This document shows, piece after piece, positions 12,195 to 50,802 of a stretch of DNA of 64,000 nt. The notes beneath the pieces were generated by a model, which worked only from the letters and a program-made list of their open reading frames with translations, ran no database searches and was not told the origin of the DNA. How positions within the stretch are numbered: the first letter of the stretch is position 1; every line of letters starts with the position of its first letter. A program made the position numbers and the translations under genes. Where the stretch lies: positions 1 through 64,000 of IMG/VR virus record IMGVR_UViG_3300024239_000013, one strand, 5' to 3'.

Positions 12195-12314
12195 TGGACA
12201 GAGCAGGACTCGAACCTGCAATAGTACCATACTTGCTTCGGATGCCTCCTACAACAACGGAATCGAACCGTATCTCTCGATGCCTCGAGCGCTTTACCAC
12301 TTCGCCACCTGTCC
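12195..12314 (-). ncRNA. tRNA-Leu-like RNA, 69-nt insert replacing the anticodon/variable arms
   Basis: Acceptor GGACAGG/TCTGTCC-A, D arm TGGCGAAGTGGTAAAGCGC, T arm GCAGG-TTCGAGT-CCTGC; extra internal ACGG-TTCGATT-CCGT. Confidence 0.75.
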
Positions 12315-36160: not shown

Positions 36161-36991
36161 TTAGGGAGTGTAGTTGTCTAGGAAGTGAATAGCCCTTCTC
36201 GCCGAATTCCTATTAAATGTTTCTCTGCTCTTAGTGTGTTTTCTGTAGTATTCACCTCTTCCGAATTCTCTATCGTAGTCATATCCAGGAGAGAGGTAGG
36301 ATTCCAATTCATCTATGAGTTCGCTCACTATTTCCTTAGTATCTATGGGAGCGAGGTCTGTTTCTAGATCCAGCCAGTCCTGAGATGACTTAGGAACCAA
36401 AGGATCATTTAGTAGATCTGTGGCGTAGTTGATTGCAGAGTCTGCGTCGTTTTGTAGTTCGATCTCGGAGCTCGGGTAGGTTAGCTGTAAAGCATATTCC
36501 TCCGGGAGGTCCAGTGTTCTAACCACCCACTTATCAGCTTTGAGCTTATCCTGAGGTCTCTTAGGTGTAAGGATAGTGAATAGTGGGATCCCAATGAAAA
36601 GCTCGAACAACTGCTCGTCATCATCGTAGTCTATTTCTCTGTATAGATCGGGTTCGCCGTCGTAATAGCTTTCCTTCAGACCTTCACCCTCACCTTTATC
36701 CTTACTCATCTCCTTATAAAGAGAAAGAGCCGAGGGTTCGTCAACCAACCCAGCCTTTACGAGTTTGGTGTAGTATGCAGGATCTTCCCATAGGTGATCC
36801 AATGCTATCTCTTCTGCAATCCCTTTGTTGTCGGCGTGTTCAGATTCTACTGCCACCCCGAGTTCCAGTTGCTTATTTTTTAGACTAAGTAGCGTGGCTT
36901 CATCTGAGATGCCATGTCTTTTGGCTACCGCGGGTAGGGTTGGGGGTTTGGAGGCTCCGCCCTGTAAGAACGATTCGAACTTTTGTATCAT
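36161..36991 (-). CDS. DUF5661-like protein with CTS-like N-terminus, GC-rich
   Basis: QL..G..VE.EH...A.EIA.DHL.E.P.YY.KL; MIQKFESFL; family name from memory. Confidence 0.7.
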   Translation of the reverse strand: MIQKFESFLQGGASKPPTLPAVAKRHGISDEATLLSLKNKQLELGVAVESEHADNKGIAEEIALDHLWEDPAYYTKLVKAGLVDEPSALSLYKEMSKDKGEGEGLKESYYDGEPDLYREIDYDDDEQLFELFIGIPLFTILTPKRPQDKLKADKWVVRTLDLPEEYALQLTYPSSEIELQNDADSAINYATDLLNDPLVPKSSQDWLDLETDLAPIDTKEIVSELIDELESYLSPGYDYDREFGRGEYYRKHTKSRETFNRNSARRAIHFLDNYTP

Positions 36992-37059
36992 GTTATGTTA
37001 GGTTATGTTATATTGTATTGTTCCTTGTATATATTTACATGCGTGTTAAAGAGGATGAG

Positions 37060-38140
37060 AGTTAAGACTAAGACTAAGACTAAGACTAAGGTTTCTCTGG
37101 GGAATTTTGGGGAGAATCCCAGAGAGGGCCCGGCCTCCAAATAGATAATAGATATAGTAAAGCTAAGTATACTAAGACTAAGACTAAGTATAAAGCTAAA
37201 GCTAAAGCTAATTAGACTAAGGCTAAGACTAAGACTAAGTATAGACATAGGTATACTAAGAAGACATCCACTATCCAGACTAAGACTAAGACTTGTTCCG
37301 TTCCTAGTTCAGCTAAGAGAACTAATCTGAGTGGTGGGCTCGCGTGCCTCTTGTGGAACCCGGGGCGAGGCGAAGGGTAAAGGGGTACAGAGGGGGTAAA
37401 CGGGGCGATTATCGGGGCGGGGAAATCGGGGCGAGATTCGGGGTCGGACTACGGGGGAAGAAACCAAGTTTTTTTCCAGTTTTTTCCAGTTTTTTCCACT
37501 TCGTTACACTCTGCCAACTTGGTGGGGAAACCCCGGGGGTAAACGGGGATTTCTTAGAATCTCCCAGAAACACCCTGGGTGGTGGGCTCGGCCCTAAAGA
37601 GGGGCTTCCACAAGGGCCCTTTTTACGAGAAAACCCCCGGTTGGATATGGATAAGTACCTGGATACTCTCTGGTTGGGTACGACTAAGTGATAGGGATAC
37701 TCTCTGGTTGGATATGGATAAGTACCTGGATACTCTCTGGTTACGTAACGATTGGGGAATGTGTCTACGTCTCTCTATGTACTAATGACTGAAGCGTCTT
37801 GAATTCCTTACGCGGGTATGCGTCCATGTAGTAACTTACTATCATACTATGTTTCTTTAGATAGTGTGGTTATTGTACTTAGTCTTAGTCTTTCTTATCT
37901 CTTCTCACTCTACTTGACTACTGAGAATTGGTTTGTTATGCTACGTAACTTATCTAGTAGTATAATGAGATAGATGTGGATATTATGCTTACTGTGCATC
38001 ACCCTGGGTAGTCTTAGTCTTAGTCTTAGTCTACCACCTACATTTATGCTTAGCTTTATACTTAGTCTTAGTGACGGAAAATGTATGAGCTATTTGGAGG
38101 CCGGGCCCTCTAGGAGAAAGGAGCCCGAAATCCCCCTCGA
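37060..38140. repeat. ~1.1-kb non-coding element with inverted arms, (ACTAAG)n tracts, a G-run tract and internal direct repeats
   Basis: Perfect inverted repeats 37123-37144/38090-38111 (22 bp) and 37177-37199/38050-38072 (23 bp); GGTTGGATATGGATAAGTACCTGGATACTCTCTGGTT twice (~37639, ~37706). Confidence 0.9.
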
Positions 38141-38667
38141 GCTCTCATTTCACCCAATTGCCTGATCCATGTTAACCGACATGATATAGAATGGATCTTT
38201 TTAAAGTAATATACAGAAAATAAAAGAAACCCATTAAAATTTTTGAGAATTTCAACTCAAATAAATCTGTTGATATGATCTTGATGGTTTCCCCGAGATC
38301 AAAGCGGGGGTGATCGAAAGGACTGGTATGGGATCTTCCTAGAATTGCAGCACTAAAAAGAATCGGAATGCTTTAATGTCGCATTCAGCATTTAATTAAA
38401 AGGCAGGTTGATTCCTGCTTTTTTTGCGCAGATTCCATAGGTCTGAGAGTTTTTATTCAAATTCATATATCACAATAAAACAATCAGTATGGTATTTATT
38501 ATACGCATTCTTAAATGCAGCAAAGTGATTTACAGAAACTCGCTAAAAAAAGATCTCTATGTCTTTATCCTAACAAAAACCGGACAATGTTTTAGAGATA
38601 TATAAAACAGAACAAAATAAAAGGTGAATTGTATAAAAAGGCGGACAATAAAAAAATCCCAAAAAAT

Positions 38668-39495
38668 ATGAGCATTAAGAATTATAAAACATTCATAAGT
38701 GAAAGTTCGGATGCAAGTACACTGACAACTGAACAAATAGATTTCCTTGACAAGTATGTTATCGGTAAATGGCATATGAATGATGATGGATTTGTTGATG
38801 TTGATGGCGTGTTTGATTGTTCTAATAAAGGGATATCTGATTTTAAAGGAATAAAGTTTGGTAATGTTGATAGACATTTTAATTGTGCTGATAACAAATT
38901 AACCTCATTAGAAGGCGGTCCAAAAGAGGTTGGTGGTAGTTTTTATTGTAGTCATAACAAAATAACCTCATTAGAATTTGGTCCGAAAGAAGTTGGTGGT
39001 CATTTTTATTGTAATCATAACAACATAACCTCATTAGAAGGTTGTCCAAAAGAGGTCGGCGGTAGTTTTAATTGTTCGTATAACAACTTAATCTCATTAG
39101 AATTTGGTCCAAAAGAGGTGAAAGGATATTTTAATTGCTCAGATAACAACTTAATCTCATTAGAAGGAGCTCCGAAAGAAGTTGACGGTAGTTTTAATTG
39201 CTCAGATAACAACTTAATCTCATTAGAAGGAGCTCCAATAGAAATTGGGCGGGAATTTTATTTGGATCATAACGAAGGTGCATCAGCAGAAACTCTAAAA
39301 TCGATATACAGTAAAATGAAAGAAGCCAAATCTGATTATAAAACAGTTTTAAAATCTTTATGGAAAGGAATATCAATAGGAGATAAAATACTTTTATACA
39401 CACCAGATCTGGATTGGGTTGAAGAAGATGAAGCGGCTAAATTATATAACCTAAAGAAGTACAATAGCATAAAGAAAATGCTCTATTTCATATAA
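38668..39495 (+). CDS. LRR array paralogue 1 (6 x 21-aa repeats)
   Basis: LTSLEGxPxEVxGxFxCxxN repeats with conserved caps; start re-called to MSIKNYKTFISES. Confidence 0.95.
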   Translation: MSIKNYKTFISESSDASTLTTEQIDFLDKYVIGKWHMNDDGFVDVDGVFDCSNKGISDFKGIKFGNVDRHFNCADNKLTSLEGGPKEVGGSFYCSHNKITSLEFGPKEVGGHFYCNHNNITSLEGCPKEVGGSFNCSYNNLISLEFGPKEVKGYFNCSDNNLISLEGAPKEVDGSFNCSDNNLISLEGAPIEIGREFYLDHNEGASAETLKSIYSKMKEAKSDYKTVLKSLWKGISIGDKILLYTPDLDWVEEDEAAKLYNLKKYNSIKKMLYFI

Positions 39496-39509
39496 TATAA
39501 AGAAGCATA

Positions 39510-40205
39510 ATGAAAAGAATCTCAAATTATAAAACATTCATAAATGAAAGTACAGGTGCAAGTACATTGACTGCAGAACAGATCGATTTCCTTGATAGAT
39601 GTGTTAGAGGAACGTGGAAGCTGAATGATGAAGAATTTGTTGATGTTGATGGGAATTTTGATTGTTTCAATAAAGGAATATCTGACTTTAAAGGAATAAA
39701 GTTTGGTAAGGTTAATGGAGATTTTGATTGTTCATATAATAATTTAAGTTCTTTGGAAGGATGTCCAAAAGAAGTTGTTGGACATTTTGATTGCTCACAT
39801 AACAAATTATCTTCATTAGAATTTGCTCCGGAAAGGGTGAGAAGTAGTTTTTATTGCTCACACAACAACTTAACCTCATTAGAATTTGCTCCGGAAAGGG
39901 TGAAAAATAGTTTTTATTGTCAGAATAACAGCTTAACCTCATTAGATGGGGTTCCTAAAAAAGTTGGAGGATTTTTTTATTTTGATCATAATGAAGGGAT
40001 TTCTTCAGAAACCTTAAAAATGATATCCATCCAAATGAAAGTAATCAAATCTGATTATAAAACAGTTTTAAAATCTTTATGGAGTGAAATACCAGTAGAA
40101 GACAAAGTACTTTTATATTCATCAGATCTAGATTGGGTTGAAGAAGATGAAGGATCTAAATTATCTAATCTAAAGAAGTATAAAAACATAAAGAAAATGA
40201 TCTAA
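39510..40205 (+). CDS. LRR array paralogue 2 (4 repeats)
   Basis: Same caps and repeat. Confidence 0.95.
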   Translation: MKRISNYKTFINESTGASTLTAEQIDFLDRCVRGTWKLNDEEFVDVDGNFDCFNKGISDFKGIKFGKVNGDFDCSYNNLSSLEGCPKEVVGHFDCSHNKLSSLEFAPERVRSSFYCSHNNLTSLEFAPERVKNSFYCQNNSLTSLDGVPKKVGGFFYFDHNEGISSETLKMISIQMKVIKSDYKTVLKSLWSEIPVEDKVLLYSSDLDWVEEDEGSKLSNLKKYKNIKKMI

Positions 40206-40221
40206 TATAATATAAAGCAAC

Positions 40222-41106
40222 ATGATGAAAAGAATCTCGAATTATAAAACATTCATAAACGAAAGCTCGAGTGAAAATAAGCTGACTCAGAAACAACTTG
40301 ATTTTCTTAACAACCACGTTAAGGGATATTGGAAGTTGAATGCTGGAGTTGTTGATGTTGATGGCGATTTTGATTGTTTTAGTAAAGGGATATCAGACTT
40401 TAAAGGAATAGTGTTTGGAAAGGTTAGCGGAGATTTTGATTGCTCACGTAATAATTTAAGTTCTTTAAAAGGTGCTCCTAAAGAGGTTGGTGGACATTTT
40501 GATTGTTCACATAACAACTTAAAATCATTAGAAGGAGCTCCAAAACAGGTTAGTGGAGATTTTGATTGCTCACGTAATAATTTAAGTTCTTTGGAAGGTG
40601 CTCCTAAAGAGGTTGGTGGACATTTCCATTGTTCATACAACAAATTAACATCATTAGAAGGTTGTCCTAAAGAAGTTGGTGGACATTTTTATTGTTATGT
40701 TAACAAATTAACCTCATTAGAATTTGGTCCTAAAGAAGTTGGTGGAGATTTCGATTGCTCTGACAACAAATTAACCTCATTAGAATTTGGTCCCGAAGAG
40801 GTTGGGAGAAGCTTTAATTGCTCAAATAACAAATTAACATCATTAGAAGGAGCTCCTAAAGAAGTTGGTGGAGATTTACGATTTTCTCATAATGAGGGAA
40901 TATCAACCAAAACGATAGGTCTTATATTTGACAAAATGAAAAAGTCCAAATTGGACTATTCTGATGCTTTAAAATCTTTATGGAAAGAAATACCAGTAGA
41001 AGACAAAGTACTTTTATATTCATCAGATCTAGATTGGATTGAAGAAGATGAAGCGTCTAAATTAGTTAAGTTAAAGAAGTATAATAGCATAAAGAAAATG
41101 ATCTAA
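40222..41106 (+). CDS. LRR array paralogue 3 (7 repeats)
   Basis: Same caps and repeat. Confidence 0.95.
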   Translation: MMKRISNYKTFINESSSENKLTQKQLDFLNNHVKGYWKLNAGVVDVDGDFDCFSKGISDFKGIVFGKVSGDFDCSRNNLSSLKGAPKEVGGHFDCSHNNLKSLEGAPKQVSGDFDCSRNNLSSLEGAPKEVGGHFHCSYNKLTSLEGCPKEVGGHFYCYVNKLTSLEFGPKEVGGDFDCSDNKLTSLEFGPEEVGRSFNCSNNKLTSLEGAPKEVGGDLRFSHNEGISTKTIGLIFDKMKKSKLDYSDALKSLWKEIPVEDKVLLYSSDLDWIEEDEASKLVKLKKYNSIKKMI

Positions 41107-41125
41107 TATAATATAAAGAAGCATA

Positions 41126-42010
41126 ATGAAAAGAATCTCAAATTATAAAACATTCATAAACGAAAGCTCGAGTGAAAGTACGCTAACACCTGAACAAATT
41201 AATTTCCTTAACAATTATGTTAAGGGATATTGGAAGTTGAATGCTGATGGAGTTGTTGATGTAGATGGCCATTTTAGTTGTTTCAATAAAGGGTTATCAG
41301 ACTTTAAAGGAATAGTGTTTGGAAAGGTTAATAGAGATTTTGATTGTTCAAACAACAACTTAACCTCATTAGAAGGCTGTCCAAAAAAAGTTGGGGGAGA
41401 TTTTTTTTGTTATGTTAACAAATTAACCTCTTTAAAAGGATCGCCAAAAGAGGTTGGTGGTAGTTTTATTTGTTCAGGTAATAACATAATCACATTGGAA
41501 GATGCACCTAAAAAAACCAGAAGAAGCTTTGATTGCTCACATAATAAATTAACATCATTAGAATTCGGTCCAAAAGAGGTTGGAGGCAATTTTAACTGCT
41601 CGCATAATAAATTAACATCATTAGAAGGTGCTCCTGAAGAAGTTGGTGTGGATTTTTATTGTTATTATAACGAATTGAATAATCTAAAGGGTTCCTCGTA
41701 TGTAGTTGGAAGAGATTTTAACTGCTCGGATAATAAATTAACATCATTAGAAGGAGCTCCAAAAGAAATTGGAGATGATTTCATATTAGAAGATAATGAA
41801 GGTGTTTCTTCAGAAATCTTAAAAGAGATATTTAGAAAAATGTTAGAATCCAAATTGGACTATAAAACAGTTTTAAAATCTTTATGGAAAGAAATCTCAA
41901 TAGAAGATAAAATACTTTTATACACACCAGATCTAGACTGGGTTGAAGAAGATGAAGGGTCCAAATTAGTTAAGCTAAAGAAGTATAGCAACATAAAGAA
42001 AATGATCTAG
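41126..42010 (+). CDS. LRR array paralogue 4 (7 repeats)
   Basis: Same caps and repeat. Confidence 0.95.
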   Translation: MKRISNYKTFINESSSESTLTPEQINFLNNYVKGYWKLNADGVVDVDGHFSCFNKGLSDFKGIVFGKVNRDFDCSNNNLTSLEGCPKKVGGDFFCYVNKLTSLKGSPKEVGGSFICSGNNIITLEDAPKKTRRSFDCSHNKLTSLEFGPKEVGGNFNCSHNKLTSLEGAPEEVGVDFYCYYNELNNLKGSSYVVGRDFNCSDNKLTSLEGAPKEIGDDFILEDNEGVSSEILKEIFRKMLESKLDYKTVLKSLWKEISIEDKILLYTPDLDWVEEDEGSKLVKLKKYSNIKKMI

Positions 42011-42024
42011 TATAAATCAGCATA

Positions 42025-42969
42025 ATGAAAAGAATAATAAATTATAAAACATTCGTAAATGAAAGTTCAGGTGCAAGTACACTGACAACTGAACAAATAG
42101 ATTTCCTTAACAGGTATGTTAGGGGGAAATGGAAGTTGAATGCTGGAGTTGTTGATGTTGATGGCGATTTTGATTGTTTTAGTAAAGGGATATCAGACTT
42201 TAAAGGAATAGTGTTTGGAAAGGTTAGCGGAGATTTTGATTGCTCACGTAATAATTTAAGTTCTTTAAAAGGTGCTCCTAAAGAGGTTGGTGGACATTTT
42301 GATTGTTCACATAACAACTTAAAATCATTAGAAGATGCACCTAAAAAAACTGGACGTAGTTTTTATTGTTCGTATAATAAATTAACCTCATTAGAATTTG
42401 CTCCGGAAAGGGTGAGAAGTAGTTTTCATTGTCAGAATAACAGCTTAACCTCATTAGAAGGAGCTCCTAAAGAAGTTGGAGGGTATTTCGATTGCTCAAG
42501 CAACAACTTAACCTCATTAGAAGGAGCTCCAAAAGAGATTGGGTATGATTTCGATTGCTCACACAACAACTTAACCACATTAGAAGGCTGTCCAAAAGAA
42601 ATTGTTGAAGATTTCGATTGCTCACACAACAACTTAACCACATTGGAATTCTCTCCAGAGAAAGTTGGTGTTAATTTTTATTGCTTCAATAACAACTTAA
42701 TTTCATTAAAAGGAGCTCCAAAAGAGATTGGATATGATTTCATATTAAAAAATAATGAAGGAGCATCATCAGAAATCTTAAAAGAGATATTTAGAAAAAT
42801 GTTAGAATCCAAATTGGACTACTCTGATGTTTTAAAATCCCTTTGGGATGAAATACCAATAAAAGATAAAATAGTTCTATATACCCCTGATCTAGACTGG
42901 GTTGAAGAAGATGAAGCGTCTAAATTATCTAAGTTAAAGAAGTATAGCAACATAAAGAAAATGATCTAG
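42025..42969 (+). CDS. LRR array paralogue 5 (8 repeats; mosaic)
   Basis: Same caps and repeat; blocks identical to paralogues 2, 3, 4, 6 and 7. Confidence 0.95.
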   Translation: MKRIINYKTFVNESSGASTLTTEQIDFLNRYVRGKWKLNAGVVDVDGDFDCFSKGISDFKGIVFGKVSGDFDCSRNNLSSLKGAPKEVGGHFDCSHNNLKSLEDAPKKTGRSFYCSYNKLTSLEFAPERVRSSFHCQNNSLTSLEGAPKEVGGYFDCSSNNLTSLEGAPKEIGYDFDCSHNNLTTLEGCPKEIVEDFDCSHNNLTTLEFSPEKVGVNFYCFNNNLISLKGAPKEIGYDFILKNNEGASSEILKEIFRKMLESKLDYSDVLKSLWDEIPIKDKIVLYTPDLDWVEEDEASKLSKLKKYSNIKKMI

Positions 42970-42983
42970 TATAAATCAGCATA

Positions 42984-43868
42984 ATGAAAAGAATAATAAA
43001 TTATAAAACATTCGTAAATGAAAGTTCAGGTGCAAGTACACTGACAACTGAACAAATAGATTTCCTTAACAGGTATGTTAGGGGGAAATGGAAGTTGAAT
43101 AATGATGGGGTTGTTGATGTAGATGGGGATTTTAATTGTTTTAATAAAGGGTTATCAGACTTTAAAGAAATAAAATTTGGAAAAGTTACAGGATATTTTG
43201 ATTGCTCTAAGAACAACTTAACCTCATTAGAGGGTTCACCAAAAAAAGTTGGTGTAGATTTTTATTGTAGTCATAACAAATTAACCTCATTAGAAGGAGC
43301 GCCTATAGAAGTTTATAGAAGTTTCGATTGCAAGGGTAACAAATTAACCTCGTTAGAATTCGGTCCAAAAAAGGTGGAGGGAAATTTTATTTGTTCAATT
43401 AACAAATTAACCTCGTTAGAATTCGGTCCAAAAGGAGTTCCTGGAACTTTCAATTGTTCATTTAACAAATTAACCTCGTTAGAATTCGGTCCAAAAGAAG
43501 TCGGAAGTAGTTTTAATTGCTCATTTAACAACTTAACCTCATTAGAATTCTCTCCAGAGAAAGTTGATGTTGATTTTTATTGCTCGAATAATAAATTAAC
43601 ATCATTAGAAGGTGTCCCAAAAGAAATTGGTGGATATTTCTGGTGTTCTTATAATGTTGGACTATCGACAGATATAATAAATCTTATATTCAGAAAAATG
43701 ATAAAGTATAGATCTGATTATAAAACAGTTTTAAAATCTTTATGGAAAGAAATCTCAATAGAAGACAAGATACTTTTATATTCATCAGATCTAGATTGGA
43801 TTGAAGAAGATGAAGCGGCTAAATTAGCTAAGTTAAAGAAGTATAGCAACATAAAGAAAATGATCTAG
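42984..43868 (+). CDS. LRR array paralogue 6 (7 repeats)
   Basis: Same caps and repeat. Confidence 0.95.
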   Translation: MKRIINYKTFVNESSGASTLTTEQIDFLNRYVRGKWKLNNDGVVDVDGDFNCFNKGLSDFKEIKFGKVTGYFDCSKNNLTSLEGSPKKVGVDFYCSHNKLTSLEGAPIEVYRSFDCKGNKLTSLEFGPKKVEGNFICSINKLTSLEFGPKGVPGTFNCSFNKLTSLEFGPKEVGSSFNCSFNNLTSLEFSPEKVDVDFYCSNNKLTSLEGVPKEIGGYFWCSYNVGLSTDIINLIFRKMIKYRSDYKTVLKSLWKEISIEDKILLYSSDLDWIEEDEAAKLAKLKKYSNIKKMI

Positions 43869-43882
43869 TATAAATCAGCATA

Positions 43883-44830
43883 ATGAAAAGAATAATAAAT
43901 TATAAAACATTCATAAACGAAAGCTCGAGTGAAAATAACTTGACACCTGAACAGATATATTTCCTGAACAAGCAGATTAAGGGGAAATGGAAGTTGAATG
44001 CTGATGGGGTTGTTGATGTTGTTGGAAATATCCATTGTTCACATAGAGAAATATCGGACTTCAAGGGAATAAAATTCGGAAAAGTTACTGGGTATTTTGA
44101 TTGCTCAAATAACAACTTAACATCATTAGAGGGTTGTCCAAAAGAGGTTGGTGGACATTTTTATTGTTCATATAACAGCTTAACATCATTAGAGGGTTGT
44201 CCAAAAGAGGTTGGGGGACATTTTTATTGTCAACGTAACAACTTAACCTCATTAGAAGGTGGTCCAGAAAGAGTGAATGGAGATTTCATTTGTTATGGTA
44301 ACAAATTAGCTTCATTAGAATTTGGACCCAAGGAGGTTAGAGGTACTTTCGATTGCTCAAATAACAAATTAACATCCTTAGAAGGATGCTCTAAAGAGGT
44401 GAATGGAGATTTCGATTGCACATATAACAAATTAACATCATTAGAATTCTCTCCAGTTAAAGTTGGTGGTACTTTCGATTGTTCAGATAATAACTTAACC
44501 TCATTAGAATTTGGACCTGAAGATGTTGGGGGAGGCTTTAATTGTTCCCGTAATAAATTAACCTCATTAGAAGGAGCTCCTAAAGAAGTTGGAGGTACTT
44601 TACGATGTTTTTATAATGAGGGTTTATCAAACGAAACAATAGGTCTTATATTTGAAAAAATGATAAAATCCAGATTGGATTATAAAACAGTTTTAAAATC
44701 TTTATGGGGAGAAATACCAATAAAAGATAAAATAGTTCTATATACCCCTGATCTGGATTGGGTTGAAGGAGATGAAGCGGCTAAATTATCTAATCTAAAG
44801 AAGTATAGCAACATAAAGAAAATGATCTAA
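43883..44830 (+). CDS. LRR array paralogue 7 (8 repeats)
   Basis: Same caps and repeat. Confidence 0.95.
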   Translation: MKRIINYKTFINESSSENNLTPEQIYFLNKQIKGKWKLNADGVVDVVGNIHCSHREISDFKGIKFGKVTGYFDCSNNNLTSLEGCPKEVGGHFYCSYNSLTSLEGCPKEVGGHFYCQRNNLTSLEGGPERVNGDFICYGNKLASLEFGPKEVRGTFDCSNNKLTSLEGCSKEVNGDFDCTYNKLTSLEFSPVKVGGTFDCSDNNLTSLEFGPEDVGGGFNCSRNKLTSLEGAPKEVGGTLRCFYNEGLSNETIGLIFEKMIKSRLDYKTVLKSLWGEIPIKDKIVLYTPDLDWVEGDEAAKLSNLKKYSNIKKMI

Positions 44831-44846
44831 TATAATATAAAAAAAC

Positions 44847-45794
44847 ATGATGAAAAGAATAGTAAATTATAAAACATTCATAAACGAAAGCTCTGGTGAA
44901 AATAACCTGACCCCAGAACAAATTGATTTCCTTAACAACTATGTTAAGGGGAAATGGAAGTTTAATGTTGGAGTTGTTGATATTGATGGCGATTTTAGTT
45001 GTTTCGATAGAGGAATATCTGACTTTAAAGGAATAGTGTTTGGAAGGGTTACCGGTCATTTTGACTGTTCGGATAACAACTTAACATCATTAGAAGGTTG
45101 TCCAAAAGAGGTTGGTGGAAATTTTTATTGTCATTATAACAACTTAACCTCATTAGAAGGTTGTCCAAAAGAGGTTGGCGGACATTTTTATTGTCATTAT
45201 AACAACTTAACATCATTAGAAGGTTGTCCAAAAAAAGTGAATGGAGATTTCGATTGCACAGATAACAACTTAACCTCATTAGAATTCGGTCCAAAAGAGA
45301 TTAATGGACATTTTTATTGTTATGATAACAGCTTAACCTCATTAGAATTTGGTCCCGAAAGAGTGAATGGAGATTTTGATTGTTCGAATAACAACTTAAC
45401 CTCATTAGAATTTGGACCCAAAGAGGTTGGTGGTACTTTCGATTGCTCACGTAATAACTTAAGCTCGTTAGAAGGTGTTCCTGAAAAGCTGAACGGAGTT
45501 TTTTATTTCTCATGTAACAAATTAACCTCATTAGAAGGTGCTCCTAAAAAACTAGGATCACAATTTTTTTGTGAGAATAATGAAGGGATATCAACCAAAA
45601 CGATAAATCTTATATTTGACAAAATGGAAACCTCCAAATCTGATTATAAAACAGTTTTAAAATCTTTATGGAAAGAAATACCAATAGAAGATAAAATACT
45701 TTTATACACCCCAGATCTTGATTGGGTTGAAGAAGATGAAGGGTCTAAATTAGCTAAGTTAAAGAAGTATAGCAACATAAAGAAAATGATCTAA
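44847..45794 (+). CDS. LRR array paralogue 8 (8 repeats)
   Basis: Same caps and repeat. Confidence 0.95.
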   Translation: MMKRIVNYKTFINESSGENNLTPEQIDFLNNYVKGKWKFNVGVVDIDGDFSCFDRGISDFKGIVFGRVTGHFDCSDNNLTSLEGCPKEVGGNFYCHYNNLTSLEGCPKEVGGHFYCHYNNLTSLEGCPKKVNGDFDCTDNNLTSLEFGPKEINGHFYCYDNSLTSLEFGPERVNGDFDCSNNNLTSLEFGPKEVGGTFDCSRNNLSSLEGVPEKLNGVFYFSCNKLTSLEGAPKKLGSQFFCENNEGISTKTINLIFDKMETSKSDYKTVLKSLWKEIPIEDKILLYTPDLDWVEEDEGSKLAKLKKYSNIKKMI

Positions 45795-45812
45795 TATAAT
45801 ATAAAGAGCACA

Positions 45813-46508
45813 ATGAAAAGAATAGTAAATTATAAAACTTTCATAAATGAAAGTGCAGGTGCAAGTACACTGACTTCAGAACAGATAGATTTCCTTAACA
45901 ACTATGTTAAGGGGAAATGGAAGCTGAATGGTGAAGGATTTATTGATATAGATGGTGATTTTAGTTGTTTCGATAAAGGGTTATCAGACTTTAGATGGAT
46001 AAAATTTGGAAAAGTTACAGGGTATTTTTATTGTTCATATAATGGATTGACATCATTAGAGGGAGCACCAAAAAAAGTTGGTTTGAGTTTTTATTGTCAT
46101 AATAACAAATTAACATCATTGGATGGCTCTCCTAAAGAGATTGGTGGAAATTTCGATTGCTCTGACAACAAATTAACCTCATTAGAATTCTCACCCGAAA
46201 GTGTAAAGGGGAGCTTTGATTGCTCATATAACAACTTAACATCATTAGAATTTGGTCCTAAAGAAGTTGGCGGAGATTTACGATTTTCTCATAATGAGGG
46301 ATTGTCAACCAAAACGATAGGTCTTATATTTGACAAAATGGAAAAGTCCAAATTGGACTATAAAACAGTTTTAAAATCTTTATGGAAAGAAATACCAATA
46401 GAAGATAAAATACTTTTATACAATGCGGATCTAGATTGGATTGAAGGAGATGAAGCGGCTAAATTAGCTAAGTTGAATAAATATAGCAACATAAAGAAAA
46501 TGATCTAA
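45813..46508 (+). CDS. LRR array paralogue 9 (4 repeats)
   Basis: Same caps and repeat. Confidence 0.95.
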   Translation: MKRIVNYKTFINESAGASTLTSEQIDFLNNYVKGKWKLNGEGFIDIDGDFSCFDKGLSDFRWIKFGKVTGYFYCSYNGLTSLEGAPKKVGLSFYCHNNKLTSLDGSPKEIGGNFDCSDNKLTSLEFSPESVKGSFDCSYNNLTSLEFGPKEVGGDLRFSHNEGLSTKTIGLIFDKMEKSKLDYKTVLKSLWKEIPIEDKILLYNADLDWIEGDEAAKLAKLNKYSNIKKMI

Positions 46509-46527
46509 TATAATATAAAGAAACATA

Positions 46528-47412
46528 ATGAAAAGAATAGTAAATTATAAAGCATTCATAAACGAAATCTCGAGTGAAAATAACTTGACACCAGAACAGA
46601 TAGATTTCCTTAACAGGTATGTTGAGGGGAAATGGAAGTTGAATGCTGATGGAGCTGTTGATGTAGATGGCGATTTTAGTTGTTTCGATAAAGGGTTATC
46701 AGACTTTAAAGGAATAGTGTTTGAGAAGATTAGTGGAGATTTTGACTGTTCGGCTAACAGCTTAATATCATTAGAAGGTTGTCCAAAAGAGGTTAATGGA
46801 TATTTTTATTGTCATTATAACAAACTAACCTCATTAGAATTTGGTCCTGAAAGTGTAGATGGAGATTTCGATTGTTCGAATAACAATTTAACTTCATTAG
46901 AATTTGGACCCAAAGAGGTTGGTGGAAATTTTGACTGTTCATACAACAAATTAACCTCATTAGAAGTCTGTCCAAAAAAAGTTGGGGGAACTTTCAATTG
47001 TTCATTTAATAAATTAACATCATTAGAATTCAGTCCAAAAGAGGTTGGTGGTAGTTTCAATTGCTCATTTAACAACTTAACATCGTTGCAATTCTCTCCA
47101 GAGAAAGTTGATGCTTATTTTCATTGTTCAAATAACAACTTAACCTCATTAGAAGGGGTATCAAAAGAAGTTGGAGGGAATTTAAGATGTTTTTATAATG
47201 AAGGGCTATCAACCGAAACAATAAATCTTATATTTGACAAAATGATAAAGTCCAAATTGGACTATTCTGATGCTTTAAAATCTTTATGGAAAGAAATACC
47301 AGTAGAAGACAAAGTACTTTTATACACACCCGATCTAGATTGGGTTGAAGAAGACGAAGCGTCTAAATTAGCTAAGCTAAAGAAGTATAGCAGCATAAAG
47401 AAAATGATCTAG
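46528..47412 (+). CDS. LRR array paralogue 10 (7 repeats)
   Basis: Same caps and repeat. Confidence 0.95.
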   Translation: MKRIVNYKAFINEISSENNLTPEQIDFLNRYVEGKWKLNADGAVDVDGDFSCFDKGLSDFKGIVFEKISGDFDCSANSLISLEGCPKEVNGYFYCHYNKLTSLEFGPESVDGDFDCSNNNLTSLEFGPKEVGGNFDCSYNKLTSLEVCPKKVGGTFNCSFNKLTSLEFSPKEVGGSFNCSFNNLTSLQFSPEKVDAYFHCSNNNLTSLEGVSKEVGGNLRCFYNEGLSTETINLIFDKMIKSKLDYSDALKSLWKEIPVEDKVLLYTPDLDWVEEDEASKLAKLKKYSSIKKMI

Positions 47413-47426
47413 TATAAAGAAGAATA

Positions 47427-48374
47427 ATGAAAAGAATAGTAAATTATAAAACTTTTATAAACGAAAGTTCAGGTGCAAGTACACTGACAACTGAACAGAT
47501 AGATTTCCTTAACAGGTATGTTAAGGGGAAATGGAAGTTGAATGATAATGGAGTTGTTGATGTTGATGGTGATTTTAGTTGTTCCGATAAAGAAATATCA
47601 GACTTTAAAGGAATAATATTTGGAAAAGTTACCGGTCATTTCTATTGCTCAAGTAACAACTTAAGATCATTAGAAGGTTGTCCCAAAGAGGTTGGAGGGG
47701 GTTTCAATTGCTCACGTAATGAATTAACATCATTGGAAGGTTGTCCAGAAAGGGTGAATGGAGATTTCATTTGTTATGGTAACAACTTAACCTCATTAGA
47801 AGGTTGTACAGAAAGAGTGAATGGAGATTTCATTTGTTCGGCTAACAACTTAACCTCATTAGAAGGCTGCCCTAAGGAAGTTGAGGGATTTTTCAATTGT
47901 TCATTTAATAAATTAGCTTCTTTAGAAGGATGTCCTGGAGAAATTGGAAGTAGTTTTTATTGTTCGTATAACAAATTAACCTCATTAGAATTTGGCCCAG
48001 AAATGGTGAATGGAGATTTCGTTTGTTCAGATAACAAATTAACCTCGTTAGAATTCAGTCCAAAAGAAGTTGGTGGTAATTTTATTTGTTCAGATAACAA
48101 CTTAACATCATTAGAGGGAATATCAAAAAAAGTTGGGGGATCTTTATGGTGTTCTTCTAATGAAGGACTATCAACCGAAACGATAGATCTTATATTTGAT
48201 AAAATCATAAAGTTCAAATTGGACTATTTGGATGCTTTAAATTTTTTATGGGAGGATATCCCAATAGAAGATAAAGTACTTTTATACACACCCGATTTAG
48301 ATTGGATTGAAGGAGAGGAAGCGGTTAAATTATCTAATCTAAAGAAGTATAGTAAAATAAAGAAAATGATATAA
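47427..48374 (+). CDS. LRR array paralogue 11 (8 repeats)
   Basis: Same caps and repeat. Confidence 0.95.
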   Translation: MKRIVNYKTFINESSGASTLTTEQIDFLNRYVKGKWKLNDNGVVDVDGDFSCSDKEISDFKGIIFGKVTGHFYCSSNNLRSLEGCPKEVGGGFNCSRNELTSLEGCPERVNGDFICYGNNLTSLEGCTERVNGDFICSANNLTSLEGCPKEVEGFFNCSFNKLASLEGCPGEIGSSFYCSYNKLTSLEFGPEMVNGDFVCSDNKLTSLEFSPKEVGGNFICSDNNLTSLEGISKKVGGSLWCSSNEGLSTETIDLIFDKIIKFKLDYLDALNFLWEDIPIEDKVLLYTPDLDWIEGEEAVKLSNLKKYSKIKKMI

Positions 48375-48418
48375 TACGGGGATTATAGAATACATAATAG
48401 AAAAAAATAATAAACGAT

Positions 48419-48877
48419 ATGAGATATATTCAACTTTACGAGAACTTCTCGGTATTAAATGAGACTACCATTGATAGATTTAGTCCTGATGTTATTAGAG
48501 GTCAAGATGCAATCGATTCTCAATTTTTTAATAAATTGATGCCAAAAACAGCAAAAACAACATCAGAAGCTCAGAACAGGATATTATCATTTTCTGGCGG
48601 TACTATGTTTGTACATTATCAATACTTCATTGTTACACCAAAGGGAAATACCCCCGATAGACCTATTTATAGAATACATAATAGCCAATATTGGTTAAAT
48701 GACTACCAATTAATTAGGCAGGGTAAAAATGGACAGGATGTAAACGTAACCGAGATTTACATAACCGACATTACAGATCCCAAAAACGAGATTAGACTCG
48801 GATCGGTTTATGTTGATACTAGAATTTATTTAGATGAACAAAAAATTGTTTTTGATGTACTCAAGAGTCATTCATAA
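48419..48877 (+). CDS. Hypothetical protein with CTS-like N-terminus (MRYIQLYENFSVLNE)
   Basis: Shared N-terminal motif. Confidence 0.8.
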   Translation: MRYIQLYENFSVLNETTIDRFSPDVIRGQDAIDSQFFNKLMPKTAKTTSEAQNRILSFSGGTMFVHYQYFIVTPKGNTPDRPIYRIHNSQYWLNDYQLIRQGKNGQDVNVTEIYITDITDPKNEIRLGSVYVDTRIYLDEQKIVFDVLKSHS

Positions 48878-48969
48878 AAAGATAATAAAAATTGAATGAA
48901 TTAAATTTAAGTATTCAGACAATATTTAAAGAAGATCTTAAGTGTTTATATTTTAATGATATATATAAA

Positions 48970-49476
48970 ATGAATAAAATATTAACATTAAGCGCATTGA
49001 TAGCTCCGGTTATTTATGAAGCTCAGATCACAGTGATGAACCAGAGTTCCATAGAATCGGGACTAAAGATAGTAAAAGGATTAATCAAAAGAGGGTTTAC
49101 TCCTAAAGCTGCAGCTGCAATAGCAGGAAATATGTGGCAGGAATCTAGGTTTAATCCAAAGATTAGCCACAAAAACTCTCAGCACGTTGGTATAGTACAA
49201 TGGGGTGGTAAGAGAAAGCAAAACCTAATGAAAAGATCTGGATGGAGCAGATTAGAAACACAATTAGATTTTGTTAAACATGAATTTGATACAAACGATC
49301 AGTTTAAAAAGCTACTAAAGAACATCGAAAAGGTGTCATTGAAAAAAGCAACCGAAGCAGTTGCAAGAACCTATGAGGGATGCAGAGATCCTCATCACCC
49401 AAATAGGAATTCGGCTGCACAAAAACTGTTTGAAGCATATAAAAAAGAAAAACAGACAGTAGATATAATAGAATAA
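48970..49476 (+). CDS. Phage tail lysozyme (Phage_lysozyme2-like)
   Basis: AAAIAGNMWQESRFNP, GIVQW...R, QLDF; start re-called after GATATATA. Confidence 0.85.
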   Translation: MNKILTLSALIAPVIYEAQITVMNQSSIESGLKIVKGLIKRGFTPKAAAAIAGNMWQESRFNPKISHKNSQHVGIVQWGGKRKQNLMKRSGWSRLETQLDFVKHEFDTNDQFKKLLKNIEKVSLKKATEAVARTYEGCRDPHHPNRNSAAQKLFEAYKKEKQTVDIIE

Positions 49477-49495
49477 AAATTAAAAATATAAGGAT

Positions 49496-49771
49496 ATGAA
49501 AAACATAAAACTATATGAAAATTTCATTAACGAAAAAATTTCATCCGAAGCTGTTTATATTCACAATATAACCGGTGCTGGACAACAATCTATTCAAAAC
49601 TTTATTGACGACAATAATATAGACGCTGATAAATTAGCGGAATATGTGAAAGTAAATAAGGATCATAAAGAAAAGTATGATGTAAGAGATATGATTTCAG
49701 GAACTGGACTAGGATCAGATAAAAATAGAAGAGAAAATTTTATTAAAAAATTCAAGAGAGGTAAAAAATAG
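49496..49771 (+). CDS. Small protein with CTS-like N-terminus (MKNIKLYENFINE)
   Basis: Shared N-terminal motif. Confidence 0.8.
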   Translation: MKNIKLYENFINEKISSEAVYIHNITGAGQQSIQNFIDDNNIDADKLAEYVKVNKDHKEKYDVRDMISGTGLGSDKNRRENFIKKFKRGKK

Positions 49772-49839
49772 AACTATTTAATTCGAAACACATTAAAAAA
49801 TCATATCTATAATTTAGATATGATTTTTTTTAGGATATT

Positions 49840-50802
49840 ATGACAGAAGAAAAACTTTTTAGATGGACTAATTATTCAGTAAAGTCACTAGAAAATTTAA
49901 TTGAAGGGATGGAAAAACATCATCCGGAAGATTATAAAAAGATAAAGGAAATAAGTGATCGTTTACTATTGTATTATAGGGGAGATAATATATTAACAGA
50001 AAAACAAAAAAATACTCTAGATTCTTTATCTAAAGATTGGTACATATCACCAGAAAACGGAGGGGTTAATATTGGATATATGTATGCTTCGGATTGGGGA
50101 TTATCCATTAAAAATTATTGGGAAGAGGATACGGAATCTGCGAGAAAAAAAAGACTAAAGCTTTTTGAGGATCTTAAAAAAATAAAATTTAATGAGGTTT
50201 ATTCTCTTTCTTTGAGATCGTGTGGATTAGAAGAATTTTGGCCAAATATGCCAAAAAGAACTTCTAGATTTGATTGTTCCTATAATAAGATAGAAAGTCT
50301 AGTTGGAGGTCCAGAATATGCTAGTGAATACGATTTCTGTGGGAATAATATTAAAAGCTTTGATGGGTTACCTGACAATGTTAAAGAATTAGATTGCAGT
50401 CATAACCCAATAGAGGATTTTTCAACCCTAAAAGTTAAAGAATTATTAAGGTTTAGATGTCGGGATACACATATAAAAAATCTAATAGGTTGTCCTAAAG
50501 TTACAACCTTTTTAGACGTATCAGGATGTAAGTTAACCTCAGTTGAAGGAGCCCCGTTAAATTTAACCTTAAGAGAGGTTAATTTTGGGGAAAATGTGGT
50601 TAGTGAAAAAACATTAAAACTTGCTTTCAATGCAATGAAAAAAGCTAAAGGAGATTATGGTAAAGGATTGGATAAAATATGGAAAAAAATACCTATAGAA
50701 GACCAAATACAAATGTATAAGGACAATCCAAATCTTACTAATGATGAGGTAAAAAAATATTACAATTTAAAAAAATATTTTGATATAAAAACTTTTATAT
50801 AA
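49840..50802 (+). CDS. Divergent LRR protein related to the array, lacking the CTS-like N-terminus
   Basis: FDCSYNKIESLVGGP-type repeats; C-cap VSEKTL...DY...L..IWK.IPIED...LKKY; class II promoter. Confidence 0.85.
   Translation: MTEEKLFRWTNYSVKSLENLIEGMEKHHPEDYKKIKEISDRLLLYYRGDNILTEKQKNTLDSLSKDWYISPENGGVNIGYMYASDWGLSIKNYWEEDTESARKKRLKLFEDLKKIKFNEVYSLSLRSCGLEEFWPNMPKRTSRFDCSYNKIESLVGGPEYASEYDFCGNNIKSFDGLPDNVKELDCSHNPIEDFSTLKVKELLRFRCRDTHIKNLIGCPKVTTFLDVSGCKLTSVEGAPLNLTLREVNFGENVVSEKTLKLAFNAMKKAKGDYGKGLDKIWKKIPIEDQIQMYKDNPNLTNDEVKKYYNLKKYFDIKTFI

What the first reader, a model, noticed from the sequence alone, without database searches (positions are those of the whole stretch)
37060..38140. 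1.1-kb inverted-arm element with telomere-like (ACTAAG)n and a G-quadruplex-prone core, upstream of the LRR array
Seen: perfect 22-bp and 23-bp inverted repeats and mirrored (ACTAAG)n/(CTTAGT)n tracts form ~150-bp arms around a ~770-bp core. The core has about ten runs of 3-5 G within ~100 bp (37361-37457), three TTTTTTCCA copies and a 37-bp direct repeat. It lies at the switch from minus- to plus-strand transcription. Inference: an origin, a cruciform/terminus, or an invertible segment; a G4-linked recombination trigger for the neighbouring array (by analogy with the Neisseria pilE G4) is more speculative.
Basis: partly seen in the sequence, partly recalled or inferred. Interest (0 to 1): 0.6.

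Follow-up and report, generated by a model that had tools for sequence, protein, structure and literature searches.

The report
Conserved divergent control region of jumbo phage
The 1.1-kb "inverted-arm element" is real: it is a single-copy, mostly non-coding control region from which two gene blocks of an uncultivated 319-kb Bacteroidota-type jumbo phage diverge. It is conserved in at least 15 related phage contigs and fixed in one orientation; what its GC-rich core does is still unknown.

Summary
The window is the first 64 kb of a 319,334-bp IMG/VR phage record related to huge Bacteroidota phages.

- **Conservation:** The same gene-poor region lies upstream of the same acidic-protein gene in 15 other metagenomic or viral contigs. 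Its core always has the same orientation.
- **Arms:** They are mirrored copies of an outward-facing cassette. Each has a locus-specific box (CTATTTGGAGGCCGGGCCC), then about 58 nt later the phage's general upstream motif (G)ATATATA, then a start codon.
- **Hexamer tracts:** The (ACTAAG)n tracts are lineage-specific microsatellites. Relatives carry AG-rich tracts there instead, and copy number varies between strains.
- **Core:** It is an oriented island of 53-62% GC. It holds CGRGGCGR octamers, three phased T-tract/CCAC boxes and an invariant block of about 46 bp.
- **G-quadruplex:** The motif is unique in this genome but not conserved in relatives.
- **Inversion:** No sign of it. Contigs show one orientation, 16 of 16 loci agree, and the phage encodes no recombinase.
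- **RNA:** No Rfam hit, no RNA covariation and no excess fold stability.

Best reading: a divergent promoter and regulator-binding hub. A replication origin or a non-coding RNA in the core remain live rivals.

The parts
36161..36991 (-). Flanking leftward gene, 276 aa: an N-terminal DUF5661 domain plus a conserved acidic C-terminal domain of about 180 aa. This gene is always linked to the element.
   Evidence: Pfam DUF5661 E 8.6e-11. C-domain conserved in 9 loci, with the N-domain absent in 3. pI 4.5. AF2 pLDDT 77 with no fold match. 101 homologous clusters in metagenomes.
37028..37035 (-). ATATATA-type upstream motif of the leftward gene, about 37 nt before its ATG.
   Evidence: Sequence. ATATATA is the most enriched 7-mer upstream of genes genome-wide (68 of 416 against 7.4 expected). 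It lies 109 nt after the box start here.
37063..37092 (+). (AAGACT)5 hexamer tract between the left box and the leftward gene.
37123..37144 (-). Left copy of the locus-specific box (CTATTTGGAGGCCGGGCCC plus TCT), pointing left.
   Evidence: Perfect 22-bp inverted pair with 38090-38111. The only two copies in 319 kb even with 5 mismatches allowed. Conserved in relatives.
37158..37293 (+). Left-arm purine-rich microsatellite zone: (ACTAAG)n, (AAAGCT)n and variants.
   Evidence: Relatives carry AG-rich tracts here instead. A strain in run X6 has a 15-nt insertion at 37231.
37294..37310 (+). GTTCCGT motif, the inner inverted-repeat partner of ACGGAA at 38074-38079. In relatives it reads GTTCCGTCTCCTATAGAGAG.
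   Evidence: Sequence comparison.
37340..37625 (+). Oriented GC-rich core. It holds CGRGGCGR octamers (37361-37457), three T-tract/CCA boxes 10 bp apart (37469-37498), block D (37531-37565), the invariant block E (37571-37620) and a short T run.
   Evidence: Alignments of 9 and 16 homologues. nhmmer E 1e-19 to 1e-77 in 8 distant contigs. GC 53-62% in all, against 34-44% in the flanks. CGGGGCGA occurs only here in the genome.
37375..37405 (+). The only canonical G-quadruplex motif in the 319-kb genome. It is lineage-specific.
   Evidence: Regex and G4Hunter scan of the genome and relatives.
37639..37747 (+). Lineage-specific direct repeat (42 nt at 95%, plus three 15-nt copies). It causes the unitig breaks.
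   Evidence: Contig breaks at 37646-37735. Absent from relatives.
37829..37853 (+). Block F (…ACTATCATACTATGTT…), conserved in most relatives about 100 nt right of block E. Here it is displaced by the direct repeats.
   Evidence: blastn match to L012-L015. Alignment.
37876..38072 (+). Right-arm pyrimidine-rich zone with (CTTAGT)n tracts at 37876-37892, 38009-38033 and 38050-38072.
   Evidence: A strain in X6 has one extra CTTAGT unit at 37877.
38090..38111 (+). Right copy of the box, pointing right.
38183..38223 (+). GATATAGA upstream motif followed directly by only a 10-codon ORF. This looks like the remnant of the cassette's original first rightward gene.
   Evidence: Sequence. Motif position 92 nt after the box start. 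Relatives have full ORFs at this position.
38629..50802 (+). Tandem array of LRR paralogues: the plus-strand island served by the right side of the element.
   Evidence: ORF list and Pfam LRR_4 hits. The local positive GC skew spans only 37-51 kb.

Best explanation
The element is the conserved intergenic control region from which two gene blocks of a jumbo phage are transcribed in opposite directions.

**Arms.** Each arm is a copy of the same outward-pointing cassette:
- a 19-22-bp box found nowhere else in the genome;
- a short GC-rich palindrome or hairpin;
- about 58 nt after the box start, the phage's general upstream motif (G)ATATATA;
- then the first start codon.

The box is most likely the site of a dedicated regulator, or a specialised promoter. 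It would couple the leftward operon (an acidic protein plus small ORFans, which look like early genes) to the variable rightward genes (here the LRR array).

**Hexamer tracts.** They are slippage-prone microsatellites that grew in the spacers between cassette and core. They have no telomere function.

**Core.** Between the cassettes lies an oriented, GC-rich core of about 290 bp. It is built from same-strand octamers, three helically phased T-tract/CCAC boxes and two invariant palindromes. I read it as a DNA platform for protein assembly: an enhancer or operator cluster that may also serve as the replication origin.

**Shown:** anatomy, uniqueness, conservation, fixed orientation, and the box-to-ORF geometry.
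**Inferred:** promoter and regulator function, early timing, and the DNA-level role of the core.
For: - **Synteny and conservation:** the core lies upstream of the same gene in 15 other loci.
- **Box geometry:** 25 boxes were found in 16 loci. Of these, 23 point at an ORF start (median 87 nt). An ATATA[TG]A motif lies 57-60 nt after the box start in about half of them. Some relatives have extra boxes in front of further rightward genes.
- **General upstream motif:** ATATATA is the top enriched 7-mer upstream of genes (68 of 416 against 7.4 expected), and GATATATAG is 12 of 12 on the coding strand.
- **Box is locus-specific:** it is confined to this locus in three complete genomes.
- **Arm symmetry:** inverted arm similarity outscores direct similarity in all six genomes tested, while the arm repeats differ between lineages.
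- **Gene arrangement:** genes diverge here in every relative.
- **Neighbouring genes:** the leftward genes are small ORFans with no family hits.
- **Possible partners:** the phage has three sigma-70-family genes, so non-host promoter classes are plausible.
- **Core looks like binding sites:** blocks are invariant without 3-nt periodicity, there is a frameshifting indel inside block E, palindromes are perfect, and repeats lie on one strand.
- **No RNA-structure signal**.
Against: - No transcription start, regulator or binding has been shown.
- The box does not match the Bacteroidota -33/-7 consensus. That consensus is my own knowledge, not something tested here.
- No candidate DNA-binding partner was identified. 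The only linked protein is acidic and of unknown fold.
- A 290-bp island held at 53-62% GC regardless of flank GC is more typical of RNA genes than of operators.
- A metatranscriptome holds a 224-nt contig of the core.
- The box-to-ATATATA spacing is loose in several cassettes, including both cassettes of this window (92 and 109 nt).
Confidence: 0.45

Rival explanations
1. The core is the phage's replication origin, possibly activated by the flanking divergent transcription. The CGRGGCGR octamers would act as iterons for an unidentified initiator. The three phased T-tract/CCAC boxes would act as a bent or easily melted region, or as weak DnaA-like sites. In this lineage, the G-rich non-template strand could favour an R-loop or G4 primer. 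This is compatible with the best explanation for the arms.
For: - Single copy per genome, and the octamers are unique to the locus.
- Four to six same-strand octamers are followed by three boxes at 10-bp phase, in all 16 homologues.
- Inverted protein-site-like boxes flank the core.
- It sits at a divergent transcription point.
- It holds the strongest G4/G-skew stretch of the genome.
- The layout resembles octamer-iteron origins such as P4 ori. That comparison is my own knowledge and was not tested.
Against: - Cumulative GC skew shows no genome-wide switch here, only the local gene-strand island.
- The region is GC-rich, not AT-rich.
- No initiator, helicase or polymerase gene is adjacent, and the linked protein is acidic.
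- Octamer spacing (12-14, 25, 40 bp) is not helically regular.
- G-richness is not conserved: core skew is -0.07 to +0.23.
Confidence: 0.25
2. The core encodes a plus-strand non-coding RNA of about 250-300 nt. It would end near the hairpin and short T run after block E (about 37625). It would be protein-bound or weakly structured, with the repeated octamers as protein-binding motifs.
For: - GC content is held at 53-62% whatever the flank GC, which is typical of RNA genes in AT-rich genomes.
- A long invariant block of about 46 nt persists while the neighbouring protein is only 20-40% identical.
- Orientation is fixed.
- Block E has hairpin potential, its one-sided changes keep G-U or A-U pairs on the plus strand, and a T run follows in some lineages.
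- A 224-nt contig covering 37393-37605 occurs in a metatranscriptome.
Against: - No Rfam family even at E up to 5.
- Fold energy equals that of shuffles: z = 0.24 on the plus strand and 1.63 on the minus strand.
- Only 1 compensatory pair among 19 predicted pairs in 16 sequences.
- The T run has 4 or more T in only about 6 of 16 sequences.
- No promoter was found upstream.
- The metatranscriptome contig does not prove transcription, because DNA carry-over is possible and contigs are unstranded.
Confidence: 0.2
3. The segment between the 22-bp inverted boxes is an invertible switch (an inverton) that flips to redirect expression between the leftward operon and the LRR array.
For: Perfect 22-bp inverted repeats about 950 bp apart flank a non-coding segment next to a variable surface-type gene array. 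Invertons are common in Bacteroidota; this is my own knowledge.
Against: - Core orientation relative to the flanking gene is identical in 16 of 16 loci.
- No strand-change joints were seen, and unitigs run unbroken through both boxes in two DNA runs.
- No Resolvase or Phage_integrase domain exists anywhere in the phage.
- In several relatives the left box is degenerate, a gene (DUF2452) sits inside the segment, or extra boxes lie further right.
Confidence: 0.03
4. The element marks a physical genome feature: a terminus or terminal-repeat boundary, a pac site, or an injection-stop region. An injection-stop region would resemble the repeat-rich non-coding region beside the pre-early genes of phage T5; that comparison is my own knowledge.
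For: - It is a unique, repeat-rich, ORF-free region of about 1 kb next to a block of small ORFan genes.
- Contig depth is about two-fold higher left of about 37.7 kb than right of it, in two runs: 81.8 against 40.1, and 8-11 against 5.
Against: - Depth figures are per-contig means and can equally reflect strain variation of the variable right side.
- Contigs span the region collinearly.
- The large terminase gene is about 45 kb away.
- The assemblies of relatives break in tandem-repeat genes, not here.
- No read-start data could be obtained.
Confidence: 0.05
5. It is a non-autonomous mobile element of the MITE type, bounded by terminal inverted repeats.
For: Inverted termini enclose a non-coding interior with a composition foreign to the genome.
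Against: - Single copy in each of three complete genomes.
- It lies at the same syntenic site in all 16 loci, with divergence tracking the neighbouring gene.
- It is absent from 185,579 prokaryote species genomes and from 50,697 phage records.
Confidence: 0.02

Closest known systems
Divergent early control regions of large phages, for example lambda pL/pR with nutL/nutR (own knowledge)
   Same: Two outward-facing, near-identical cis modules occur only at this locus. Each lies in front of the first gene of an operon that leaves a central regulatory region.
   Different: The centre has no repressor gene. The modules share no sequence with nut or put sites. The central core is a 290-bp GC-rich repeat platform. 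Transcription has not been mapped.
Iteron-type origins with short octamer repeats, for example phage P4 ori/crr and lambda ori (own knowledge)
   Same: Several same-strand short repeats lie next to a T-rich phased stretch, in single copy, near active promoters.
   Different: No adjacent initiator gene, a GC-rich rather than AT-rich setting, irregular repeat spacing and no skew switch.
Bacteroidota invertible promoters (invertons) and the phage Gin/Cin/Hin segments
   Same: Perfect inverted repeats of about 20 bp flank a non-coding segment beside a variable gene array.
   Different: One orientation only in 16 loci and in reads-derived contigs. No recombinase in the phage. The left repeat is degenerate in relatives.
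Neisseria pilE G4 recombination initiator
   Same: A G4-capable run lies upstream of a tandem array of variable paralogues, in this genome only.
   Different: The G4 motif is not conserved in relatives, most of which have no LRR array there. No recombination joints involve the element.
Large phage-borne non-coding RNAs in Rfam (GOLLD, ROOL and others)
   Same: A GC-rich, conserved non-coding island of several hundred nucleotides in a phage genome.
   Different: No match to any of 4227 Rfam models, no covariation and no excess stability.

Membership tests
Invertible DNA switch (inverton) | Inverted repeats flank the segment | tested here: met
   22-bp perfect pair at 37123-37144 / 38090-38111.
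Invertible DNA switch (inverton) | Both orientations present in a population or among close relatives | tested here: not met
   No strand-change joints in contigs of runs X1 and X2, and unitigs cross both repeats. Same orientation in 16 of 16 loci. Contigs can hide rare variants.
Invertible DNA switch (inverton) | A site-specific recombinase encoded by the element or genome | tested here: not met
   No PF00239 or PF00589 match in six frames of the 319-kb genome. Controls were positive. A host enzyme was not testable.
Iteron-type replication origin | Cluster of direct repeats as initiator sites | tested here: inconclusive
   Four to six CGRGGCGR octamers on one strand are conserved in 16 sequences, but with irregular spacing and no known binder.
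Iteron-type replication origin | Adjacent AT-rich unwinding region | tested here: inconclusive
   Only a 30-bp stretch of three phased T tracts. The surrounding core is 55% GC.
Iteron-type replication origin | Linked initiator or replication genes | tested here: not met
   The neighbours are ORFans. The linked protein is acidic (pI 4.5) with no known fold. No DnaB or PolA domain lies nearby.
Iteron-type replication origin | Genome-wide compositional skew switch at the site | tested here: not met
   Cumulative GC skew falls monotonically except over the 37-51 kb plus-strand gene island. Phage skews are often dominated by transcription, so this is weak evidence.
Iteron-type replication origin | Supports initiation of replication | not testable with these tools
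   Needs marker-frequency analysis, 2D gels or a plasmid replication assay.
Structured non-coding RNA | Match to a described RNA family | tested here: not met
   Rfam 15 at gathering thresholds and at E up to 5: nothing in 36900-38300.
Structured non-coding RNA | Compensatory base changes supporting helices | tested here: not met
   0 of 23 pairs in 9 sequences and 1 of 19 pairs in 16 sequences.
Structured non-coding RNA | Folding energy below shuffled controls | tested here: not met
   z = 0.24 on the plus strand and 1.63 on the minus strand.
Structured non-coding RNA | Transcribed as a discrete RNA | tested here: inconclusive
   One 224-nt contig (37393-37605) in a metatranscriptome run. It is unstranded and DNA carry-over is possible.
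Genome terminus / telomere / pac-cos site | Coincides with physical DNA ends (read-start pile-up, coverage step) | tested here: inconclusive
   Only Logan contigs were available. Per-contig depth falls about two-fold across 37.7 kb in two runs, but contigs are collinear.
Genome terminus / telomere / pac-cos site | Close to terminase genes, or a contiguous palindrome (protelomerase type) | tested here: not met
   TerL lies at 311 kb. The arms are separated by more than 770 bp.
pilE-type G4 recombination trigger | G4-forming motif | tested here: met
   The only canonical G4 motif of the genome lies at 37375-37405, with G4Hunter 2.04. This is sequence prediction only.
pilE-type G4 recombination trigger | Motif conserved and linked to the variable array in relatives | tested here: not met
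   No canonical motif in 6 of the 10 relative loci scanned. Right-hand genes differ, with LRR genes only in the window and L016.
MITE / transposon | Multiple copies or polymorphic insertion sites | tested here: not met
   Single copy in G000, G002 and G004, and always at the same syntenic site.

The most novel reading that the evidence does not exclude
The oriented GC-rich core is a new class of phage cis/RNA element, specific to a clade of uncultivated jumbo phages. One form would be a protein-bound non-coding RNA of about 280 nt, built from repeated CGRGGCGR motifs and ending in an invariant double hairpin. The other would be a transcription-primed (R-loop or G4-assisted) origin whose firing is set by the two mirrored box cassettes.
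Probability: 0.2. Interest if true: 0.7.

Novelty: new member of a known kind. Interest (0 to 1): 0.45.

Why it matters
Almost nothing is known about how huge phages of Bacteroidota start transcription or replication, because none of this clade is in culture. This locus is a single-copy element with sharply defined, conserved motifs. Those motifs can be used directly as bait for DNA or RNA pull-downs, as probes for 5'-end mapping, and as a marker to recognise this phage clade in metagenomes. Relatives occur in subsurface, freshwater and wastewater samples. The result also removes an attractive but wrong reading, namely a phase-variable or G4-driven switch for the LRR array.

Tried and rejected
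- **Similarity and host searches:**
  - blastn of the region against 50,697 phage records found nothing.
  - A block E pattern scan of 185,579 prokaryote genomes found nothing, so this is not a host-derived attP or tRNA piece.
  - Block E resembles a tRNA 5' half (acceptor plus D arm), but no tRNA model matches and no T arm exists. I treat the likeness as chance or mimicry.
- **Coding potential of the core:** rejected. The ORFs there are not conserved in frame, a 1-nt indel sits inside the most conserved block, and conservation shows no 3-nt periodicity.
- **Flanking protein:** Pfam, PHROGs, the ESM Atlas, Foldseek PDB/BFVD and VIA wide gave no function.
- **First related-loci scan:** a scan with the single protein failed. 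It succeeded only with alignments.
- **Long terminal repeat in the 373-kb relative:** rejected. It is a 307-bp overlap in a tandem-repeat gene.
- **The box as a general promoter class:** rejected, because it occurs only at this locus.
- **Host sigma-70-type promoter scan:** fewer hits than in shuffles.
- **Literature:** searches for DUF5661 and for jumbo-phage origins found nothing relevant.
Full report
**What the window is.** The window is bases 1-64000 of a 319,334-bp IMG/VR virus record. The record has 31% GC and about 87% of its large ORFs lie on the minus strand. A 1220-aa protein of the genome finds only huge or jumbo phages by tblastn: Tenacibaculum, Flavobacterium, Chryseobacterium and Prevotella (Lak) phages, and uncultured 460-735-kb phages. 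So this is an uncultivated jumbo phage, probably of a Bacteroidota host. Table 11 reads the genome well and no other code was used.

**Checking the observation.**
- A perfect 22-bp inverted pair lies at 37123-37144 / 38090-38111.
- A perfect 24-bp pair is made of hexamer tracts.
- Mirrored (ACTAAG)n and (CTTAGT)n tracts are present.
- Ten G runs lie in 37361-37457.
- Three TTTTTTCCA copies sit 10 bp apart.
- A 37-bp perfect direct repeat is present.

The longest perfect inverted repeat (24 bp) exceeds all 200 dinucleotide shuffles, whose maximum is 18. Tandem ACTAAG occurs nowhere else in the genome. Its orientation is strictly split: four + tracts on the left and three - tracts on the right. 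The G-run stretch is the top G4Hunter region (2.04) and holds the only canonical G4 motif of the whole genome. The region has 43.6% GC in a 31% GC genome. It lies between a minus-strand gene (36161-36991) and the plus-strand LRR array (from 38629). The GC-skew flip there is local. Only 37-51 kb has positive skew, matching the one plus-strand gene island, and the cumulative skew otherwise falls monotonically.

**The element is conserved, single-copy and syntenic.**
- The 22-mer box and a 62-bp core piece matched four IMG/VR contigs of 126-373 kb.
- A third lineage, a 290-kb contig, was found through the neighbouring protein.
- A degenerate pattern of the most conserved block found nine further metagenome contigs. 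It found none in 185,579 prokaryote genomes and none in 50,697 phage records.
- A profile of the neighbouring protein's C-terminal domain found 101 protein clusters. Eight of their contigs were fetched, chosen for long contigs. All eight carry the core directly upstream of that gene, with nhmmer E-values from 1e-19 to 1e-77.
- In every locus a minus-strand gene of this family starts 370-580 nt left of the conserved block, and plus-strand genes resume to the right.
- The core has the same orientation relative to that gene in 16 of 16 loci.
- Within the own genome the region matches only itself.

**Anatomy of the arms.** The perfect 22-bp pair is a box (CTATTTGGAGGCCGGGCCC plus TCT) that points outward on both sides.
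- It occurs only twice in the 319 kb even with five mismatches allowed. It is also confined to this locus in two other complete genomes.
- Across 16 loci I found 25 boxes. Of these, 23 are followed in their own direction by an ORF start (median 87 nt, range 30-381).
- An ATATA[TG]A motif lies 57-60 nt after the box start in about half of them. Some relatives have a second or third box in front of further rightward genes.
- ATATATA is the most enriched 7-mer in the 80 nt upstream of the phage's genes: 68 of 416 against 7.4 expected. GATATATAG lies 12 of 12 times on the coding strand, between a T-rich and an A-rich stretch.

So each arm is one cassette: a locus-specific box, a short GC palindrome, the general upstream motif, then the start codon. 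The inverted symmetry follows simply from two such cassettes pointing apart. In this window the right cassette is followed by only a 10-codon ORF (38191-38223), and the LRR array starts about 400 nt later. The cassette's original first gene seems to have been lost.

A second inner inverted pair exists (GTTCCGT… on the left, …ACGGAA on the right), at variable distance from the box.

Between these motifs and the core, the left side is purine-rich and the right side pyrimidine-rich in most relatives. The repeat unit differs, though: ACTAAG here, AG-rich units elsewhere. A strain 90-95% identical in a wastewater run carries one extra CTTAGT unit and a 15-nt insertion in the tracts. The tracts are therefore unstable, lineage-specific microsatellites and not telomere repeats. 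Inverted similarity between the two arms outscores direct similarity in all six genomes tested. In the window it also exceeds the similarity to orthologous arms. This points to shared constraint or to homogenisation between the arms.

**Anatomy of the core.** Alignments of 9 and then 16 homologues show an oriented series of blocks:
- four to six CGRGGCGR octamers on one strand (CGGGGCGA occurs three times in the genome, all here);
- three T-tract/CCAC boxes about 10 bp apart;
- a GGGTAAnCGGGG block;
- a nearly invariant block of about 46 bp made of two palindromes (CCACCC-T-GGGTGG and CCCTnnAGAGGG);
- about 100 nt further on, an ACTATCATACTATGTT-type block.

The core holds 53-62% GC in every lineage, while the flanks range from 34 to 44%. 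Its G-over-C excess is not conserved: skew runs from -0.07 to +0.23. G4 propensity is not conserved either: G4Hunter is 1.2-1.3 with no canonical motif in several relatives.

The core is not coding. ORFs there are not conserved in frame, conservation has no codon periodicity, and a 1-nt indel sits inside the most conserved block.

The right half of the region is variable. This window has a private direct repeat there. Four relatives have a DUF2452 gene inserted.

- *Inversion.* Logan contigs of two DNA runs that hold 82-94% of the stretch are collinear with the window. They show no strand-change joints in 37.0-38.2 kb, and unitigs pass unbroken through both boxes. The only breaks fall at the 37-bp direct repeat. 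Together with the fixed orientation in 16 loci and the absence of any Resolvase or Phage_integrase domain in the genome, an invertible switch is very unlikely. Contigs can hide rare variants, so raw reads remain the formal test.
- *Terminus or cruciform.* The arms are 770-930 bp apart. To my knowledge that is far too distant for cruciform extrusion. TerL is about 45 kb away. The 'direct terminal repeat' of the 373-kb relative is a 307-bp overlap inside a tandem-repeat gene. The one loose end is a roughly two-fold drop in per-contig depth from left to right of about 37.7 kb in both DNA runs. It may reflect strain variation of the variable right side or a real coverage boundary, and I could not resolve it.
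- *G4 trigger.* The motif is private to this lineage, and most relatives have no LRR genes to the right.
- *Origin.* This is not excluded; see below.

**RNA or DNA?**
- Rfam gives nothing at gathering thresholds or at E up to 5.
- The core folds no better than shuffles: z = 0.24 on the plus strand and 1.63 on the minus strand.
- RNAalifold finds 0 of 23 compensatory pairs in 9 sequences and 1 of 19 in 16 sequences.
- The few one-sided changes in the block E hairpin keep G-U or A-U pairs on the plus strand. They are transitions and there are too few to count as evidence.
- A genuine metatranscriptome holds a 224-nt contig on 37393-37605. It is unstranded and may be DNA carry-over.

For an RNA speak the constant high GC and the long invariant block. 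For a DNA platform speak the perfect palindromes, the same-strand octamers, the 10-bp phased boxes and the lack of any structural signal. I lean to DNA but hold the RNA reading at about 0.2.

**The neighbourhood.**
- The linked gene encodes an optional DUF5661 domain plus a conserved acidic C-terminal domain of about 180 aa. Its pI is 4.3-4.5. The AF2 model has pLDDT 77, and no fold match appears in PDB, BFVD or the wide search. Its acidity makes it a poor candidate for the DNA-binding partner.
- The following leftward genes are small ORFans. This resembles early, host-takeover operons of large phages, which is an inference.
- The phage has three sigma-70-family genes, so promoter classes beyond the host's are plausible.

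**Verdict.** The finding is a real element with a precise architecture, conserved in a clade of uncultivated jumbo phages and not described in the libraries searched.

The best-supported reading (0.45) is a divergent transcription-control region. Two mirrored box cassettes drive or regulate the two outward gene blocks. Microsatellite spacers separate them from an oriented protein-binding core.

An origin function of the core (0.25, compatible with the above) and a core-encoded RNA (0.2) remain open. An inverton, a terminus, a mobile element and a G4 recombination trigger are each unlikely.

Noticed in passing
window 12195-12314 (-): An Rfam tRNA hit (37 bits) is stretched over 120 nt. It has an insertion of about 52 nt before the T arm and an odd anticodon loop. 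ARAGORN calls no tRNA anywhere in the window.
   Followed up: partly
window 38629-50802 (+): A tandem array of 13-14 LRR paralogues (231-320 aa) forms the only plus-strand island of the genome. Contigs of runs X1 and X2 show joints that skip 400-659 nt between paralogues. These are either copy-number variants or paralogue cross-mapping.
   Followed up: partly
window about 37668-37713: Per-contig depth drops about two-fold from left to right in two DNA runs: 81.8 to 40.1, and 8-11 to about 5. This may be strain variation of the right side or a real coverage boundary. It is unresolved because only contigs were available.
   Followed up: partly
window 6573-7490 (+); G000 294.2 kb and 301.8 kb (-): The phage encodes three sigma-70-family proteins. 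One is 305 aa with regions 2, 3 and 4. Two are of ECF size, from open frames of 166 and 203 aa.
   Followed up: partly
whole G000 genome; e.g. 183886, 263701, 310202 (-): (G)ATATATA, set between T-rich and A-rich stretches, is the phage's general upstream motif: 68 of 416 upstream regions against 7.4 expected. GATATATAG is 12 of 12 on the coding strand, 2-25 nt before an ATG in 9 of the 12 copies. It is probably a phage promoter or leader element.
   Followed up: partly
L016 3002-3424; L116 2018-2404; L117 2049-2435; L101: In four relatives a DUF2452 gene sits inside the right half of the otherwise non-coding region, on the same strand as the acidic-protein gene.
   Followed up: partly
G002 (373,467 bp) ends; G000 end 319,1xx-319,334: Contig ends of this phage group fall in long tandem-repeat genes. 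The IMG/VR 'direct terminal repeat' of the 373-kb relative is a 307-bp overlap inside such repeats, so it says nothing about the real termini.
   Followed up: yes
runs X5-X20: Relatives 90-95% identical over parts of the stretch occur in wastewater runs from several independent studies. The best holders are subsurface and soil metagenomes.
   Followed up: no
window 25137-26141 (-), 26833-27630 (+), 51328-52131 (+): Other genes in the neighbourhood include a KaiC/RecA-like ATPase, a CHAP-domain protein and an SLT transglycosylase-domain protein.
   Followed up: no
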